IMG/VR virus record: IMGVR_UViG_3300021962_000021 | Span: 1 to 64,000 of that record | DNA length: 64,000 nucleotides | Direction: 5' to 3' (one strand) | Part shown: in pieces, positions 58,621 to 63,755 of the stretch | Layout of the letters: each line of letters opens with the position of its first letter | Position numbering within the stretch: the stretch's first letter is position 1 | The notes under the pieces: model-generated | Databases searched by the model: none | The model's input: the letters and a program-made list of their open reading frames with translations, nothing else | Told to the model about the DNA's origin: nothing | Program-made: the position numbers and the translations under genes

Positions 58621-58679
58621 TTTCACATCTAAATTTATTCTATTTATAATTTGTTGATAATCAATGAGTTATAAATAAA

Positions 58680-58747
58680 TTTGGCGATTTCAAAAATTCT
58701 TCGTATATTTGATATTCAAATCGGTAATACTGATTTTAGTTCTTTAA
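58680..58747 (+). promoter_or_regulatory. sigma70-type promoter plus boxA-like element upstream of tmRNA
   Basis: TTTG 58680, TATATTTG 58704-58711, AGTTCTTTAA 58738-58747. Confidence 0.75.
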
Positions 58748-58752
58748 AATAT

Positions 58753-59122
58753 GGGGATGTTTGGTATTGATTGCCATGCGAATGATAATATCACAAGTAG
58801 AGAAATGATACTATCTCTTAATATCGTATCGAAACAATAAATGACGAAAAGTCAACAATGACTTACGATGACCTTATGGCATTCGTAGGTATGGATTACG
58901 CTGTAGCAGCCTAATCCTACTCGGGTCGGAATACATATAACCTAGGAACAGAAGTATCTATAAAGGTGGAAAATTGACTGAACCCAAAATCGAGTCAAAA
59001 CATTGATTATGATAAAATGTAAAAACTCATATATTTGTCAGTTGTGAATAACTGAATAAACTTGTGAGACGTTGGTATTATGATTACTCGGTAAGACACG
59101 GGTTCGACTCCCGTCATCTCCA
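58753..59122 (+). ncRNA. ssrA: tmRNA
   Basis: GGGGATG/CATCTCC acceptor stem with G3-U, T-arm GGTTCGACTCC, tag ORF 58843-58914 ending YAVAA-stop. Confidence 0.95.
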
Positions 59123-59212
59123 CAAAAACGCTAATATGTAAAGTATTGATTGTCAATAAGGCGTTGATTATCAATGAGTTATAACTTATTGATTTTCAAT
59201 GACTTAAGAAAG

Positions 59213-59221
59213 TTATCCACA
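59213..59221 (+). promoter_or_regulatory. perfect DnaA box
   Basis: TTATCCACA; single copy, function unproven. Confidence 0.4.
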
Positions 59222-59235
59222 TTTTTTAAAAAATA

Positions 59236-59306
59236 TTTGGTAGTTTAAAAAACTTTTCGTATATTTGATATTCAAATGTGAAAAACATATTTAGTTTAGT
59301 TCTTTA
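59236..59306 (+). promoter_or_regulatory. sigma70-type promoter plus boxA-like element upstream of tRNA-fMet
   Basis: TTTG 59236, TATATTTG 59260-59267, AGTTCTTTA 59298-59306. Confidence 0.75.
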
Positions 59307-59321
59307 TTTATATTATTATAT

Positions 59322-59394
59322 CGTGGGGTAGTAGCAGCGGTAGCTCGTTAGGCTCATAACCTAAAGGTCGGTGGTTCGAATCCATCCCCCGCAA
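59322..59394 (+). tRNA. tRNA-fMet (CAT), initiator type
   Basis: C1:A72 mismatch, anticodon loop CTCATAA, canonical T arm. Confidence 0.92.
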
Positions 59395-59593
59395 CAAAGT
59401 AATTAAGGTTGAAGCCAATAGTAATAAAACCGACTATGTGAAAAAAATAAAGCCGGATACCTTAATAACTTATTTTAAAAAATATTTGGTAGTTTAAAAA
59501 ACTTTCCTTATATTTACAATGTTCAAATGATATATGACCTTATAGGCGATGAAAGATACTCGGGTAGTTGATTTTGAATAAAAAATAAATAAA

Positions 59594-59692
59594 TTTGGTA
59601 GATTAATTTTTTTTTACTATATTTATTAAACATTGGGGTTGTAAATATTCTTACTAATGTAAGTTGTAAAGATTCCCCGATTAGTTCTTTAA
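59594..59692 (+). promoter_or_regulatory. promoter, hairpin and boxA-like leader
   Basis: TTTG 59594, TATATTTA 59618, GGGG..CCCC hairpin, AGTTCTTTAA 59683-59692. Confidence 0.65.
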
Positions 59693-60562
59693 AAGATTGA
59701 AAATATTTTACATAGTAGGCTCGTCCTACATAGTAAACAACCGCCGCCTATGGTGGTTAAATAAACTACGAAAGTAGGATAAAGTGAGAATGCTTGGTTT
59801 AGTATTCTTGCGGCATCAGCAATGGTGCTTGAGTAGGCAAGTGGGATATCATCTGAGCCTTGTACGAAAGGGTAACACTATATCGGAAGGGTTTGGGTGA
59901 CTGGGGATATGTAGAATCTCTAGTTGAGTTCGGAAGAACAATAAGAATAACCCATAGAATATCAGTAAGAAGTATGTGGCTAATCACTATATATCATTGC
60001 GGTATTCAATTTCAAAGTGGTCTTAAAACCAAGCTATCCGAAAGGACGTAAGGTATGTTAATGTACAAGTGGTGTTGTTATTAACCTTTAATGTGGGACA
60101 CCAATCCCTATTAATGAAGATGACTTAAAAAATGGTGTTGACGATAACACATTGGGTAGTTTAGTATTCTCTCGTTCAAAAGATGGGGGAGCTGGTTGGC
60201 AAGCCACTACCTGAACAATCTACAAACCAAACTCAAATTTGCTTTAGGTGCAAACTATAAATCAATTTTAAGCTTAAGTGCTTGCCAGTTACGGACGAAA
60301 GGTGTCTACATAGTAATGGGTTGTCCATTGCCACGATACCACCGCAAGTGGTCTGTGATTCTTACGAAAAGTTTCTAGTTCCGCAAGAATGAATTTGCTC
60401 GGCAGGGTAGAAGAAATAGAGTAATGAGAGAGTAGTCAGTAACTCAATGAGTGGTTAGCATTACTAACCGACACTGAACGGATACATCTCAAAAGGGTGT
60501 GGATAAGAAAGGAAAAAAATAATCTTTCTAAAGGACGTTCTTCCCAAATGTGTAATCTCAGC
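59693..60562 (+). ncRNA. large structured ncRNA, GOLLD-like
   Basis: ~870 nt without credible ORF, many GNRA-capped hairpins, own promoter, ends directly before a tRNA; boundaries approximate. Confidence 0.65.
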
Positions 60563-60571
60563 ATTTTATAA

Positions 60572-60665
60572 GCGGAGTTAGTGTAATGGTCCACGCGGGT
60601 TCGCCCACGGGTTAGCACACCCCTCTTCCAGGGGGGAAGATGTAGTTCGATTCTATGGCCCCGCT
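60572..60665 (+). tRNA. tRNA-Gly (TCC) with ~20 nt D-loop insertion
   Basis: CCCCT-CTTCCAG-GGGGG anticodon arm, U73, extra UUCG hairpin in D loop. Confidence 0.8.
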
Positions 60666-60996
60666 CAATTACGATTTTCGTAGTCTTTTTCCAATGTTGT
60701 TCTGGCAGGTGAGTGGACAAGTAGGTTAGGACTTTAAATATCAAACCTAAAAGTTGTAAGACTGTCAGTTTTTGTGGGGGAAGTTTTTTACTATAAACAA
60801 ACGTAATCTAACACGATATGATTACCGAATAAAAGTAGTAGGCCGCTACATTGAGAGTATTCGTTCCCCTTATTACTCTCTTTATTAAAGGCTAAATGGT
60901 AATTTGATGAGGCTAGTATTAACCGGAGCATGACTTGACGTGGCGTATTTTGAAATCGAATTACTTTTATTTAAAAAAATATTATATATATTAGAG

Positions 60997-61155
60997 ATGA
61001 AAACTTTAACATTACATACAAATTGTTCTAACCAATCATTGAGAAATGAGTGGCAGGGGATTAGTATGTTTAATGCTATATCAAATCCGGCAACGCTTAA
61101 TTTAGGCAAGGTGGATTATATTAGCAAGATGTTAGAGGACACTGATGTAGGATAA
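60997..61155 (+). CDS. short ORF, candidate leader peptide
   Basis: 52 aa MKTLTLHTNCSNQ...; stop 27 nt before a terminator that precedes the tRNA array. Confidence 0.45.
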   Translation: MKTLTLHTNCSNQSLRNEWQGISMFNAISNPATLNLGKVDYISKMLEDTDVG

Positions 61156-61182
61156 AATGTAAAAATTTTAGAACAATATTTG

Positions 61183-61214
61183 AAACCTCTAACTCACAAA
61201 GTTAGGGGTTTTTT
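61183..61214 (+). terminator. intrinsic terminator / attenuator
   Basis: AAACCTCTAAC / GTTAGGGGTTT stem plus T run. Confidence 0.8.
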
Positions 61215-61219
61215 GTTTT

Positions 61220-61294
61220 GGGGATATAGCTCAGCGGTAGAGCGGGTCACTGTTAATGACTAGGTCATAGGTTCGAATCCTTTTATCCCCGCCA
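61220..61294 (+). tRNA. tRNA-Asn (GTT)
   Basis: cloverleaf, CCA encoded. Confidence 0.95.
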
Positions 61295-61298
61295 AATA

Positions 61299-61373
61299 GG
61301 GAAATTAGCTCAGTTGGTTTAGAGCATCTCGTTTACACCGAGAGGGTCATTGGTTCGAATCCAGTATTTCCCA
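61299..61373 (+). tRNA. tRNA-Val (TAC)
   Basis: cloverleaf, TCTCG-TTTACAC-CGAGA. Confidence 0.95.
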
Positions 61374-61378
61374 CAAAC

Positions 61379-61460
61379 TGGGGTATCGCATAGTGGCAAT
61401 TGCGGCTGACTGTAAATCAGCTCTCATTTGAGTTCGGCGGTTCGAGTCCGTCTACCCCAA
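61379..61460 (+). tRNA. tRNA-Tyr (GTA)
   Basis: cloverleaf with long variable arm. Confidence 0.95.
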
Positions 61461-61469
61461 CAAACAATA

Positions 61470-61542
61470 GGTGATGTAGCTCAGTTGGTAGAGCACCGCA
61501 CTGAAGATGCGGGTGTCAGCAGTTCAAGTCTGTTTATCACCA
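61470..61542 (+). tRNA. tRNA-Phe (GAA)
   Basis: cloverleaf, CCGCA-CTGAAGA-TGCGG. Confidence 0.95.
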
Positions 61543-61548
61543 CAAAAT

Positions 61549-61622
61549 GACTTCTTAGCTCAATTGGTTAGAGCACTACACTTTTAATGTAGGGGTTTTG
61601 AGTTCGAGTCTCAAAGGGGTCA
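61549..61622 (+). tRNA. tRNA-Lys (TTT)
   Basis: cloverleaf, CTACA-CTTTTAA-TGTAG. Confidence 0.95.
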
Positions 61623-61632
61623 CTTTGAATAA

Positions 61633-61708
61633 CGGAATATAGAGGAGTCCGGTCTATCTCGCTTCGTTTGGGACGAAGAGCACGCAGGTTCGAATCCTGC
61701 TATTCCGA
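61633..61708 (+). tRNA. tRNA-Pro (TGG)
   Basis: cloverleaf, CTTCG-TTTGGGA-CGAAG. Confidence 0.95.
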
Positions 61709-61756
61709 CAGATATGGTTCGCACTAGACAATGCGTGAAAATAGGAAGTGCAAAAT

Positions 61757-61830
61757 TGGAATATAGCTCAATTGGTTAGAGCATTCGCCTGATACGCGAA
61801 AGGTTGTAGGTTCGAGTCCCACTATTCCAA
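61757..61830 (+). tRNA. tRNA-Ile (GAT)
   Basis: cloverleaf, TTCGC-CTGATAC-GCGAA. Confidence 0.95.
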
Positions 61831-61835
61831 CATAC

Positions 61836-61906
61836 ATCCGCATGGTGAAATGGTATCATAACGGTCTCCAAAACCGCTGTTCCGAGTTCGAATCTTGGTG
61901 TGGGTG
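61836..61906 (+). tRNA. tRNA-Trp (CCA)
   Basis: cloverleaf, G73. Confidence 0.9.
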
Positions 61907-61911
61907 CAATT

Positions 61912-61984
61912 GGCTCTTTGGTGTAATGGATTAGCACATAACACTACGGATGTTAGAGTAAGGGTTCGAATCCTTTAGGAGCTA
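61912..61984 (+). tRNA. tRNA-Arg (ACG)
   Basis: cloverleaf, TAACA-CTACGGA-TGTTA. Confidence 0.93.
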
Positions 61985-61999
61985 CTAAAACAAAATGAT

Positions 62000-62338: not shown

Positions 62339-62602
62339 ATGGCACATTTAATACCAAATAATTCCACTCCATCGGTAACACAAATTAAACCCAAACCAAT
62401 ATTCGTAATGAGGTTTAGTAATTCAATGAGTGATGAAGATGCGAGACAAACTTGTGAAACGATATACAAATCCGATATGAATAATGAGTATCATATAATT
62501 GTAATTCGTAATGACAAAGATAGAGATGAGTTTGAATTATATAACGCAGATAAGATTGAAAGACAAGAGTGGAATGAAATAGTTAAAAAATTAAAGTTAT
62601 GA
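62339..62602 (+). CDS. hypothetical protein
   Basis: 87 aa ORF. Confidence 0.6.
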   Translation: MAHLIPNNSTPSVTQIKPKPIFVMRFSNSMSDEDARQTCETIYKSDMNNEYHIIVIRNDKDRDEFELYNADKIERQEWNEIVKKLKL

Positions 62603-63123
62603 GACGTAAGATAATATTCATAGATGTAGATGGCCCGTTGGCGTGGGGAACGTGGGGTGATGGTAGAGTTGAAATGAGTTTAGGTTCATCATCAACATTT
62701 AAAATACCATACGCTTGGGTTGAAGAAGATTGTCAGGCTCTTAAAAAGATTTTGGATGAGAGTAATGCAAAGATGGTATTAAGTTCAGATTGGAGAAAAC
62801 ATTTTAGTTTCTTACAAATGAAAAGAATATTTGAATACTACGGAATTGCAGGACACAATTTGATTGATATAACTACACATCAGGACCTATGGATGAAGTT
62901 GAGTAGACCTGCAATTGAGTGGGAGAGAGCAGCTGAAATCAAAAAGTGGGTAAAGGATAATAAAATTAGTAATTGGATTTCAATTGATGATATGCAGTTG
63001 AATAAACAATTCAAATGGATGAAAGTTCCACAATGGAGACATGTTCAGGTTGATGGTGATTTTGGAGTAGGTGGTAGATTAAGAGATAAGATTGATGAAT
63101 GTATCATCAAACTAAATAGATAA
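62599..63123 (+). CDS. HAD-domain protein (Swiss Army Knife RNA-repair-like HAD)
   Basis: FIDVDGPL, VLSSDWR, RAAEI..W, WISIDD. Confidence 0.75.
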   Translation: MRRKIIFIDVDGPLAWGTWGDGRVEMSLGSSSTFKIPYAWVEEDCQALKKILDESNAKMVLSSDWRKHFSFLQMKRIFEYYGIAGHNLIDITTHQDLWMKLSRPAIEWERAAEIKKWVKDNKISNWISIDDMQLNKQFKWMKVPQWRHVQVDGDFGVGGRLRDKIDECIIKLNR

Positions 63124-63132
63124 AATAGTTGA

Positions 63133-63205
63133 GGCGGATTGGCCGAGGGAAGTGAGGTGAAGCTCTGCAAAAGCTTTTAGGTAGGTTTGAATCCTACATC
63201 CGCCT
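63133..63205 (+). tRNA. tRNA-Cys (GCA)
   Basis: cloverleaf, U73, AAGCT-CTGCAAA-AGCTT. Confidence 0.9.
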
Positions 63206-63214
63206 CAACTATAT

Positions 63215-63283
63215 TGTGGGAAGGTTAGGTAACCCGTTTGGTCTCATAAGCCAGATATTCAGGTTCGATTCCTGGTCCCGCAA
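63215..63283 (+). tRNA. tRNA-Met/Ile2 (CAT) with shortened D arm
   Basis: intact acceptor, anticodon and T arms; 69 nt. Confidence 0.75.
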
Positions 63284-63289
63284 CAACAT

Positions 63290-63364
63290 GGTGGCCGTAG
63301 CCTAATGGTAGGGCGAAAGTTTGTGGCACTTTATGTAAGAGTTCGATTCTCTTCGGTCACACCA
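63290..63364 (+). tRNA. tRNA-His (GTG)
   Basis: G-1, cloverleaf, A73, CCA encoded. Confidence 0.93.
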
Positions 63365-63423
63365 CCCCGGGTTTTGGAGCTGGTATCTCTTTTTCCCGAT
63401 ATAAATGAAAAAACTACCAAAAA

Positions 63424-63507
63424 GGAAAGATGGGTGAGTGGTTTAAACCAGCAGTTTACTAAACTGCCGATTCAAAAGGTCCGTGAGTTCGAATCTCACT
63501 CTTTCCG
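63424..63507 (+). tRNA. tRNA-Ser (ACT)
   Basis: long variable arm, G73, GCAGT-TTACTAA-ACTGC. Confidence 0.88.
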
Positions 63508-63508
63508 C

Positions 63509-63649
63509 ATGAAAAATGATAAATTTGAAACTAACAAAAGAGTAAATCGTATTGTTAGAATAAGAAAAATTATTAGAGAAAATGGAGCTTGTTTAATATG
63601 TGTGAGAAGATGGAATGGTGGAGTGAAAAAATATAGAACAAACTGTTAA
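63509..63649 (+). CDS. small basic hypothetical protein
   Basis: 46 aa ORF MKNDKFETNKR... filling the Ser-Leu spacer. Confidence 0.35.
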   Translation: MKNDKFETNKRVNRIVRIRKIIRENGACLICVRRWNGGVKKYRTNC

Positions 63650-63652
63650 AAT

Positions 63653-63726
63653 GCCCGTATGGCGTAATTGGCAACCGCACTGGTCTTAGAAACCAGTTTG
63701 TGAAAGTTCGAGTCTTTCTACGGGTA
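63653..63726 (+). tRNA. tRNA-Leu (TAG) with short variable loop
   Basis: CTGGT-CTTAGAA-ACCAG, A73, 5 nt variable loop. Confidence 0.88.
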
Positions 63727-63755
63727 CAAAAAATAAATTATCAATATGTAATATT

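What the first reader, a model, noticed from the sequence alone, without database searches (positions are those of the whole stretch)
58680..59692. rRNA-operon-like promoter/boxA architecture driving phage stable RNAs
Seen: four sigma70-type promoters in about 950 bp, two sharing an exact 33 bp repeat. AGTTCTTTA lies just upstream of tmRNA (58738), tRNA-fMet (59298) and the large ncRNA (59683), the last preceded by a hairpin. Known: rrn leaders use a boxB hairpin and boxA (TGCTCTTTA in E. coli) to load Nus antitermination complexes. Inference: the phage co-opts host rrn antitermination for its RNA array, which may allow read-through of the 61183 terminator.
Basis: partly seen in the sequence, partly recalled or inferred. 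Interest (0 to 1): 0.6.

Follow-up and report, generated by a model that had tools for sequence, protein, structure and literature searches.

The report
Phage stable RNAs carry host rRNA boxA
A 238-kb phage of Bacteroidota places the same short leader signal (boxA, preceded by a small hairpin) that its host phylum uses in front of ribosomal RNA and tmRNA genes in front of its own tmRNA, initiator tRNA and giant GOLLD RNA, so it probably borrows the host's Nus antitermination machinery to make these RNAs.

Summary
AGTTCTTTA sits at 58738, 59298 and 59683. Each copy lies 23-55 nt downstream of a Bacteroidota sigma-A promoter (TTTG / TAnnTTT[G/A]) and directly after a small 5' hairpin. The copies precede a tmRNA, an initiator tRNA and a GOLLD RNA (Rfam 278 bits).

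- In 102 Bacteroidota 16S leaders the top non-homopolymer 8-mer is GTTCTTTG.
- GTTC[T/A]TT[G/A]A is 52-fold enriched there and strictly sense-strand (79:0).
- A second copy lies in the 16S-23S spacer in 32 of 43 operons.

GTTCTTT is invariant in 10/10 related GOLLD leaders although their flanks diverge. One of these is a distant 634-kb phage. Flavobacteriales ssrA genes also carry hairpin-boxA just before the tmRNA 5' end (14/34). Host initiator-tRNA genes do not (1/25).

The phage has no NusB, S10 or NusG. The sampled hosts have NusB (59/61) and Rho (58/61).

Best reading: a true rrn-type boxA co-opting host Nus-dependent processive transcription. Binding, antitermination and read-through of the 61182 terminator remain untested. 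This is a new client set for a known mechanism.

The parts
58654..58674 (.). Palindromic site (TTGATAATCAATG core) just upstream of promoter P1; function unknown, possibly a regulator site
   Evidence: 3 matches in the window against 0.14 expected. Further copies at 59146, 59164 and 59189, and in L002, L007, L008 and L013.
58680..58711 (+). Promoter P1, Bacteroidota sigma-A type (-33 TTTG, -7 TATATTTG); predicted start near 58716
   Evidence: Pattern scan. The -7 box spans -12 to -5 in Flavobacterium (PMC9723704).
58718..58736 (+). 5' leader hairpin (8 bp) of the tmRNA transcript
   Evidence: strand folding.
58738..58749 (+). boxA-1 (AGTTCTTTAAAA), ending 3 nt before the tmRNA 5' end
   Evidence: Fits GNTCTTTAANA 11/11 (consensus quoted). 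Identical over 15 nt to rrn leader L166.
58753..59123 (+). Phage tmRNA gene
   Evidence: ARAGORN. Rfam RF00023, 77.5 bits.
59236..59267 (+). Promoter P2 (sigma-A type), paralogous to P1; predicted start near 59272
   Evidence: Repeat families D1-D3.
59274..59292 (+). 5' leader hairpin (7 bp) of the tRNA-fMet transcript
   Evidence: strand folding.
59298..59308 (+). boxA-2 (AGTTCTTTATT), a weaker copy: core intact, 3' part deviates
   Evidence: Repeat D6 shows it is part of a duplicated leader.
59322..59395 (+). Initiator tRNA-Met (CAT), C1xA72 mismatch
   Evidence: ARAGORN. 76-86% identical to Flavobacteriales initiator tRNAs.
59485..59516 (+). Promoter P3, upstream member of a tandem pair; lies within the P2-like duplicated stretch and overlaps its 33-bp exact repeat over 59485-59505
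59594..59625 (+). Promoter P4, proximal promoter of the GOLLD unit; predicted start near 59630
   Evidence: Conserved in L002, L006, L007, L008, L013 and L030.
59632..59681 (+). Leader hairpin (boxB-like position) before boxA-3
   Evidence: -14.6 kcal/mol, z -2.2. Shorter equivalents in L030, L013 and L201; absent in L002, L006, L007 and L008.
59683..59694 (+). boxA-3 (AGTTCTTTAAAA) at the head of the GOLLD transcript
   Evidence: GTTCTTT invariant in 10/10 GOLLD leaders. Best hit of the host-derived matrix in the whole phage genome.
59695..60564 (+). GOLLD RNA: variable 5' domain (inferred from about 59710, where the first helix shows compensatory changes among relatives) and conserved 3' domain 60152-60564
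   Evidence: Rfam RF02032, 278.6 bits, model 1-416. 5' helix seen in the alignment.
60572..60667 (+). Degenerate tRNA-Gly(UCC)-like element with an insertion, directly after GOLLD
   Evidence: Read from sequence. ARAGORN calls tRNA-Gly at the same place in L001 and L030.
60997..61155 (+). Small conserved ORF (52 aa) between GOLLD and the terminator
   Evidence: no Pfam family. Its C-terminal coding sequence is conserved in relatives.
61182..61212 (+). Intrinsic terminator-like hairpin with T-run, 8 nt before the first tRNA of the array
   Evidence: Conserved and abutting the tRNA array in the window and L001, L002, L006, L007 and L008; in L013 a GTTCTTTGACA motif and a 30-nt spacer lie between it and the first tRNA.
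61220..61985 (+). Array of 9 tRNA genes with no consensus promoter of its own
   Evidence: ARAGORN. After P4, the next consensus promoter on the + strand is at 64216.

Best explanation
The three AGTTCTTTA sites are RNA-level boxA elements of the host's ribosomal-RNA type. Host RNA polymerase starts at Bacteroidota sigma-A promoters. The nascent leader forms a small 5' hairpin and then exposes boxA. Host NusB-S10 binds boxA and, with NusA, NusG and accessory factors, converts the polymerase into the rrn-type processive (antitermination) complex.

That complex shields the long untranslated transcripts from Rho, above all the unit of about 1.6 kb running from P3/P4 through GOLLD to the terminator. 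It speeds elongation and may assist co-transcriptional folding.

Shown here:
- sequence identity with the host-phylum rrn and ssrA boxA;
- the same promoter-hairpin-boxA layout;
- strand specificity;
- conservation across related and distant phages;
- presence of NusB and Rho in candidate hosts and their absence from the phage.

Inferred: NusB-S10 binding, complex formation, Rho protection, and any effect on the 61182 terminator.
For: 1. Host rrn leaders. GTTCTTTG is present in 47/102, TCTTTGAA in 47 and AGTTCTTT in 31. The commonest 11-mer is GTTCTTTGAAA; GTTCTTTAAAA is also found. 68/102 leaders carry GTTC[TA]TT[GA]A. Density is 1.62/kb against 0.031/kb in flanking DNA. Sense to antisense is 79:0. 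A second copy lies behind a hairpin in the 16S-23S spacer in 32/43 operons, and there are none in 61 kb of 16S body.
2. Two phage sites fit the published E. coli consensus GNTCTTTAANA 11/11.
3. Each window leader has a hairpin, then 2-6 nt, then boxA. This is the order described for E. coli and B. subtilis rrn (PMC13753749).
4. GTTCTTT is invariant in 10/10 GOLLD leaders while upstream flanks share only 5-21 of 30 positions. One of these is the 634-kb phage LR745206.1.
5. The distance from promoter to motif ranges from 4 to 57 nt. That fits an RNA signal, not a promoter element.
6. Host ssrA genes: 14/34 carry the motif within 60 nt upstream and 0/34 downstream, and several have a preceding hairpin.
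7. The phage has no NusB, S10 or NusG. The Flavobacteriales sample has NusB in 59/61 and Rho in 58/61 genomes.
8. There is precedent for boxA ahead of long non-coding units, namely CRISPR arrays.
Against: The actual host is unknown; only its phylum, and probably its order, are inferred. Flank similarity beyond the core is weak: with the flank-only matrix the GOLLD site is at the 97th percentile, the tmRNA site at the 83rd and the fMet site at the 44th.

The element is not universal.
- Related phages L001, L002 and L006 have tRNA-fMet promoters abutting the tRNA with no boxA, and L006 lacks it before its tmRNA.
- GOLLD loci L200 (Acinetobacter phage), L204 and L206 show none.

A 74-nt tRNA or a 370-nt tmRNA has little obvious need for antitermination. 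BoxA can also promote Rho termination in some contexts (PMC12360218). No GU-rich boxC is evident.
Confidence: 0.68

Rival explanations
1. The motif is a leader element for RNA maturation or stability rather than for transcription. It would be a binding or cleavage determinant shared by precursors of host 16S rRNA, host tmRNA and the phage RNAs, for example to guide 5' processing.
For: In host and phage tmRNA genes the motif ends only 0-9 nt before the mature 5' end. It also lies directly before the first GOLLD helix. These positions fit a processing signal.
Against: In rrn operons the same motif lies 100-200 nt before 16S and again before 23S. That is the classical boxA geometry. The sequence matches boxA consensus sequences that bind NusB in E. 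coli and B. subtilis. No processing enzyme is known (from my knowledge) to recognise this sequence.
Confidence: 0.12
2. The motifs are passengers. The phage captured a host ssrA gene with its promoter and leader, duplicated that cassette in front of tRNA-fMet, and the similarity has no function in the phage.
For: P1 and P2 with their leaders are paralogous (64 nt at 78% identity; 20 nt at 85% including the motif). Host ssrA genes have the same hairpin-boxA leader. Host and related-phage fMet genes lack it.
Against: GOLLD is not a host gene, yet its leader keeps GTTCTTT in 10/10 loci with diverged flanks and in a distant phage. In L007 and L008 the tmRNA leader has the GTTCATTGAAATAT variant seen in Flavobacteriaceae rrn leaders. 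That suggests tracking of the host signal rather than decay.
Confidence: 0.1
3. The motif is a DNA-level site for a transcription factor, or part of the promoter or initially transcribed region of strong stable-RNA promoters.
For: It always lies close to strong sigma-A promoters. Other conserved DNA palindromes accompany these promoters.
Against: Spacing to the -7 box varies from 4 to 57 nt in phages and up to more than 180 nt in hosts. In one case it follows a tRNA with no promoter between (L201:1929). In host leaders it is found on the sense strand only, 79:0.
Confidence: 0.05
4. The motif before GOLLD is part of the GOLLD fold: the 5' strand of a long-range helix that closes the RNA.
For: In the window it can pair with a segment of the 3' domain around 60521-60535 (-10.7 kcal/mol).
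Against: 9.5% of shuffled motifs pair as well. The target segment is already used in local helices of the Rfam consensus. No exact complement exists in 9 of 10 loci. The same motif precedes unrelated RNAs.
Confidence: 0.03

Closest known systems
rrn leader antitermination elements (boxB hairpin - boxA - boxC) and the rrn antitermination complex of E. coli; hairpin + boxA of B. subtilis rrn operons
   Same: The order is the same: a housekeeping-sigma promoter (often tandem), a small 5' hairpin, then boxA in the nascent RNA. The core sequence is the same (E. coli UGCUCUUUAACA, B. subtilis AUGAUCUUUGAAA in PMC13753749; here GUUCUUUAAAA). The clients are untranslated, highly structured RNAs.
   Different: The clients are phage-encoded tmRNA, tRNA and GOLLD RNA, not rRNA. 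No boxC-like GU-rich element is evident. The leaders are very short for tmRNA and tRNA. Factor binding is untested in Bacteroidota.
Lambdoid phage nut sites (boxA + boxB with protein N)
   Same: A phage uses a host-type boxA to recruit NusB-S10 and make polymerase termination-resistant.
   Different: In nut sites boxA precedes boxB, and a phage N protein binds boxB (established knowledge). Here the hairpin precedes boxA, as in rrn, and varies in sequence or is absent in relatives. No phage Nus-like factor was found. The clients are stable RNAs, not delayed-early mRNAs.
boxA in CRISPR array leaders (Stringer et al. 2020, as cited)
   Same: A boxA identical to the organism's rrn boxA lies at the head of a long non-coding, multi-unit transcript and protects it from premature Rho termination.
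   Different: Those are host-encoded arrays. Here a virus carries the signal, and it serves three separate transcription units within 1 kb.
boxA in the suhB 5' leader, and the intragenic boxA in hisG
   Same: boxA recruits NusB-S10 outside rrn operons.
   Different: There it promotes Rho termination or represses translation (PMC12360218). The phage targets are not translated, so that mode is unlikely.
GOLLD RNA loci in phages near tRNA islands
   Same: GOLLD lies downstream of a tRNA-Met, next to tRNA arrays, with a tRNA-like element in the linker. This matches the description in 10.1101/2024.12.08.627333.
   Different: That paper mentions neither boxA nor antitermination (0 occurrences). The conserved boxA leader appears to be a new annotation for this GOLLD subgroup.

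Membership tests
rrn-type boxA (Nus-factor loading site) | Sequence fits the boxA consensus | tested here: met
   58739 and 59684 read GTTCTTTAAAA, which is 11/11 to GNTCTTTAANA. 59299 reads GTTCTTTATTT, which is 9/11.
rrn-type boxA (Nus-factor loading site) | Same motif present in the host's own rrn leader, and again in the 16S-23S spacer | tested here: met
   Tested at the level of the host phylum, because the true host is unknown. 68/102 leaders carry it, 32/43 spacers carry it, and enrichment is 52-fold.
rrn-type boxA (Nus-factor loading site) | Lies on the sense strand in a transcribed leader, downstream of a promoter and upstream of an untranslated RNA | tested here: met
   Promoters are predicted by pattern only. 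All three sites are on the sense strand and outside ORFs. Transcription starts are not mapped.
rrn-type boxA (Nus-factor loading site) | Preceded by a leader hairpin (boxB position) | tested here: met
   All three window leaders have one. It is not conserved in 4/10 GOLLD leaders. boxB is dispensable in E. coli rrn (established knowledge).
rrn-type boxA (Nus-factor loading site) | boxC-like GU-rich element downstream | tested here: inconclusive
   None is visible after the motifs. The host matrix shows only a weak ATTG preference downstream.
rrn-type boxA (Nus-factor loading site) | Cognate factors available | tested here: met
   NusB is in 59/61 and Rho in 58/61 sampled Flavobacteriales genomes. 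The phage has none.
rrn-type boxA (Nus-factor loading site) | Bound by NusB-S10 | not testable with these tools
   Needs a binding assay.
rrn-type boxA (Nus-factor loading site) | Confers read-through of Rho-dependent (or intrinsic) terminators | not testable with these tools
Needs reporters or transcript mapping.
Lambdoid nut site | boxA followed by a boxB hairpin that binds a phage N protein | tested here: not met
   The hairpin precedes boxA, and its sequence varies or it is absent in relatives. A search for an N homologue was not attempted.
Bacteroidota sigma-A promoter | -33 TTTG and -7 TAnnTTTG with 17-21 nt between | tested here: met
   Four sites in 946 bp; two of them end in TTTA instead of TTTG. 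Consensus as in PMC9723704.
GOLLD RNA (RF02032) | Covariance-model score above the gathering threshold | tested here: met
   278.6 bits against a threshold of 150, full model 1-416.

The most novel reading that the evidence does not exclude
In Bacteroidota, boxA-loaded polymerase may be a general stable-RNA machine serving rrn and ssrA. Large phages would plug their own RNAs into it. For GOLLD, the Nus complex would act as a co-transcriptional chaperone needed to fold and assemble the nanocage RNA. Several strong phage boxA leaders might also compete with host rrn operons for limiting NusB-S10, contributing to host shut-off.
Probability: 0.15. Interest if true: 0.8.

Novelty: new member of a known kind. 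Interest (0 to 1): 0.6.

Why it matters
GOLLD is one of the largest structured bacterial or phage RNAs. It forms a nanocage and has no known function. A conserved boxA at its head gives a concrete, testable handle on how it is made: by Nus-modified, Rho-resistant polymerase, possibly with chaperone help.

The work also defines the Bacteroidota boxA from data (GTTC[T/A]TT[G/A]A, in both the leader and the spacer). It shows that ssrA genes of Flavobacteriales carry it, which widens the presumed Nus regulon in a phylum where transcription elongation control is little studied.

For phage biology, it is an example of a virus copying host stable-RNA expression signals, not only host promoters. For annotation, the hairpin-boxA signature helps to delimit transcription units in phage RNA islands.

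Tried and rejected
I therefore made no read-mapping attempt by any other route, and read laying was not used.

2. Extended similarity beyond the core: a 44-nt matrix from 66 host sites ranks the GOLLD site first in the phage genome. The flank-only version carries little information (percentiles 0.97, 0.83 and 0.44), so I claim only the core of 9-12 nt.

3. Long-range pairing of the motif with the GOLLD 3' domain: rejected.

4. Motif-independent survey of GOLLD loci in IMG/VR with a 16-base 3'-domain pattern: only 6 loci were returned. Two have the motif at the expected -734/-772, two have none, one was too short and one was probably spurious. This is too small to generalise.

5. Acinetobacter phage Ab15 GOLLD: no boxA-like site within 4.2 kb. 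The feature is therefore not universal to GOLLD.

6. Phage-encoded NusB, S10 or NusG: none found.

7. Host initiator-tRNA genes as a source of the fMet leader: 1/25 carry boxA. The fMet copy is better explained by duplication of the tmRNA cassette.

8. Literature searches for a described Bacteroidota boxA, or for boxA ahead of phage tmRNA, tRNA or GOLLD, found nothing relevant in the held library. One apparent hit was a BOXA1R PCR primer.

9. The large protein searches, structure prediction and complex prediction were not used, because the claim does not rest on a protein.

Full report
CONTEXT

The window is the first 64 kb of a 238,219-bp IMG/VR virus record rated complete, with 31% G+C and no rRNA gene. 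It encodes phage-type DNA polymerase and ribonucleotide reductase.

From 58.7 kb onward lies an RNA island, all on the + strand:
- tmRNA (58753-59123);
- initiator tRNA-Met (59322-59395);
- a GOLLD RNA, whose conserved 3' half scores 278.6 bits (60152-60564);
- a degenerate tRNA-Gly-like element;
- a 52-codon ORF;
- a terminator (61182-61212);
- then tRNA arrays. The genome has 27 tRNA and tmRNA genes in all.

OBSERVATION

All stated coordinates hold.
- AGTTCTTTA occurs at 58738, 59298 and 59683. There are seven copies in the window against 0.90 expected and nine in the genome.
- Four promoter-like sites lie within 946 bp.
- P2 and P3 share an exact 33-bp repeat, 59224-59256 = 59473-59505.

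The promoters are of the Bacteroidota sigma-A kind, with -33 TTTG and -7 TAnnTTT(G/A). In Flavobacterium the -7 box spans -12 to -5 (PMC9723704). That places the starts near 58716, 59272, 59521 and 59630, and the motifs at about +23, +28 and +55.

Folding shows that each of the three leaders begins with a hairpin, followed 2-6 nt later by the motif. P3 and P4 form a tandem pair 109 bp apart.

IS IT THE HOST boxA?

I sampled 120 genomic loci with a Bacteroidota 16S 5' signature. This gave 102 leaders of at least 300 nt.
- The most widespread non-homopolymer 8-mers are GTTCTTTG (47/102), TCTTTGAA (47) and AGTTCTTT (31).
- The commonest 11-mer is GTTCTTTGAAA. GTTCTTTAAAA, the phage form, also occurs.
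- A T-to-A variant, GTTCATTGA, is common in Flavobacteriaceae.
- 68/102 leaders carry GTTC[TA]TT[GA]A, always on the sense strand (79 against 0).
- Density is 1.62 per kb against 0.031 per kb in the far-upstream DNA of the same loci.
- The motif usually lies 100-200 nt before the 16S.
- A second copy lies in the 16S-23S spacer in 32 of 43 operons, typically right behind a G+C hairpin. None occurs in 61 kb of 16S body.

This two-site geometry is that of boxA. The sequence fits the published consensus sequences: E. coli UGCUCUUUAACA and B. subtilis AUGAUCUUUGAAA, and GNTCTTTAANA. One Flavobacteriales leader (L166, an Owenweeksia MAG) is identical to the phage tmRNA leader over 15 nt.

Host leaders often show a sigma-A promoter, a hairpin, an A-rich spacer and then boxA. 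48/102 have two or more promoter-like sites.

CONSERVATION IN PHAGES

A neighbouring gene brought in 79 related IMG/VR loci. Seven of them include the RNA island.

Before GOLLD, GTTCTTT is invariant in all ten leaders examined: the window, L002, L006, L007, L008, L013, L030, L207, L203 and L201. Their upstream flanks share only 5-21 of 30 positions with the window.

L201 comes from the 634-kb phage LR745206.1, whose GOLLD is only about 65% identical. In that phage:
- hairpin-AUUA-GTTCTTTGAAA follows a tRNA and precedes GOLLD, with no promoter in between;
- a second promoter-hairpin-boxA heads another tRNA.

The hairpin is present in the window, L030, L013 and L201 with different sequences, and absent in L002, L006, L007 and L008.

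Before the tmRNA:
- L030 has the same motif;
- L007 and L008 have GTTCATTGAAATAT, the Flavobacteriaceae variant;
- L006 has none.

Before tRNA-fMet, only the window and L013 have it. In L001, L002 and L006 the promoter abuts the tRNA.

L013 has further copies. One sits at +1 of a tRNA-Glu promoter. Another, GTTCTTTGACA, sits just after the terminator and before the tRNA array. The second resembles the host spacer form.

HOST STABLE-RNA GENES

In 34 Flavobacteriales ssrA genes, 14 have GTTC[TA]TT within 60 nt upstream. It mostly ends 0-9 nt before the 5' GGGG, and several have a preceding hairpin. About six more have near variants. None of the 34 has the motif in the 90 nt downstream.

Host initiator-tRNA genes almost never have it (1/25). 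The phage tmRNA unit therefore mirrors host ssrA genes. The window's fMet leader is best read as a duplicate of the tmRNA promoter-leader (repeat families D3 and D6).

FACTORS

The phage has no NusB, S10 or NusG domain. Sampled Flavobacteriales genomes have NusB in 59/61 and Rho in 58/61.

MECHANISM

The best-supported reading is that host polymerase, started at sigma-A promoters, is modified at the phage boxA by host NusB-S10 and partners into the rrn-type complex. That complex blocks Rho and counteracts pausing and hairpin-dependent termination.

The clearest beneficiary is the untranslated GOLLD unit of about 1.6 kb. After P4, no consensus promoter occurs on the + strand until 64216. The tRNA arrays at 61220-61985 and 63133-63727, and the ORFs between them, therefore lie behind GOLLD and the terminator.

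The terminator is conserved in the six relatives that reach it. In the window and five of them it directly abuts the first tRNA; in L013 a boxA-like motif lies between. From established knowledge, rrn complexes act mainly on Rho-dependent sites and still stop at the rrn operon's own terminal terminators. I put the read-through sub-claim at about one in three.

RIVALS

- A processing signal: suggested by the closeness to the tmRNA 5' end, but at odds with the rrn geometry.
- Passive carry-over from a captured ssrA cassette: fits the fMet copy but not the GOLLD conservation.
- A DNA-level site: contradicted by the variable spacing and strict strand bias.
- A structural strand of GOLLD: no complement in 9/10 loci, duplex no better than shuffles, and the target is already paired in the Rfam model.

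KNOWN OR NEW

The mechanism is known from rrn operons, lambdoid nut sites, CRISPR leaders and suhB. The clients are new.

The GOLLD cryo-EM paper mentions neither boxA nor antitermination. My searches of the held library found no description of a Bacteroidota boxA, or of boxA ahead of phage tmRNA, tRNA or GOLLD. That library lacks most subscription journals, so earlier comparative work on boxA may exist. I recall Arnvig et al. 2008 from memory but did not check it.

I rate this a new member of a known kind, of moderate to good interest.

LIMITS

- There are no RNA or binding data.
- The host is identified only to phylum and probable order.
- The GOLLD survey is small and partly drawn from relatives.
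- Promoters are pattern matches.

Noticed in passing
window 58654-58674, 59146-59209; also L002:1068, L007:11731, L008:13072, L013:14718: A palindromic site with a TTGAT(A/T)(A/T)TCAATG core lies just upstream of P1. Three tandem copies lie between the tmRNA and P2. It is conserved upstream of the equivalent promoters in relatives. It may be a regulator operator or a bidirectional hairpin.
   Followed up: partly
window 59543-59565; same element in L002, L006, L008, L030: A conserved stretch of about 20 nt (ATAGGYGATGAAAGATACTCG) lies between the tandem promoters P3 and P4. It could open a mini-ORF starting MKDTR, or be a small RNA or protein site. Unexplained.
   Followed up: no
window 60572-60667: A tRNA-Gly(UCC)-like sequence with an insertion in its 5' half lies directly after the GOLLD 3' domain. 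ARAGORN does not call it here but calls tRNA-Gly at the same place in L001 and L030. This fits reports of tRNAs in the GOLLD linker.
   Followed up: partly
Flavobacteriales ssrA loci L208-L241: Host tmRNA genes commonly carry a hairpin plus a boxA-like GTTC(T/A)TT 0-9 nt before the mature 5' end (14/34, with none downstream). I found no description of boxA at ssrA genes.
   Followed up: yes
window 58753-59123 and L006, L007, L008, L030: ARAGORN predicts an unusually long tag peptide for the phage tmRNA, ending in YAVAA. It is conserved among relatives with one D/N change.
   Followed up: no
window 63424-63508; L007:14878: ARAGORN calls a tRNA-Ser with anticodon ACT (A at the wobble position), an unusual anticodon. 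It is conserved in a relative.
   Followed up: no
window 62599-63123: An ORF inside the tRNA island carries a HAD domain of the 'Swiss Army Knife' RNA-repair proteins (PF18143, 1.3e-19). It may be linked to tRNA repair.
   Followed up: no
window 60997-61155 with terminator 61182-61212: A small 52-aa ORF with no family match, followed by a strong terminator hairpin, is conserved in six relatives. In five of them, as in the window, the first tRNA of the array follows the terminator directly.
   Followed up: partly
L013:16418-16480: In one relative a boxA of the host spacer type (GTTCTTTGACA) lies between the terminator T-run and the first tRNA. The terminator hairpin may double there as the leader hairpin of a re-loading site.
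   Followed up: no
genome position 103857 (- strand), outside the window: This is the only other GTTCTTTAA site in the genome that lies outside any ORF of 70 aa or more. Its context was not examined.
   Followed up: no
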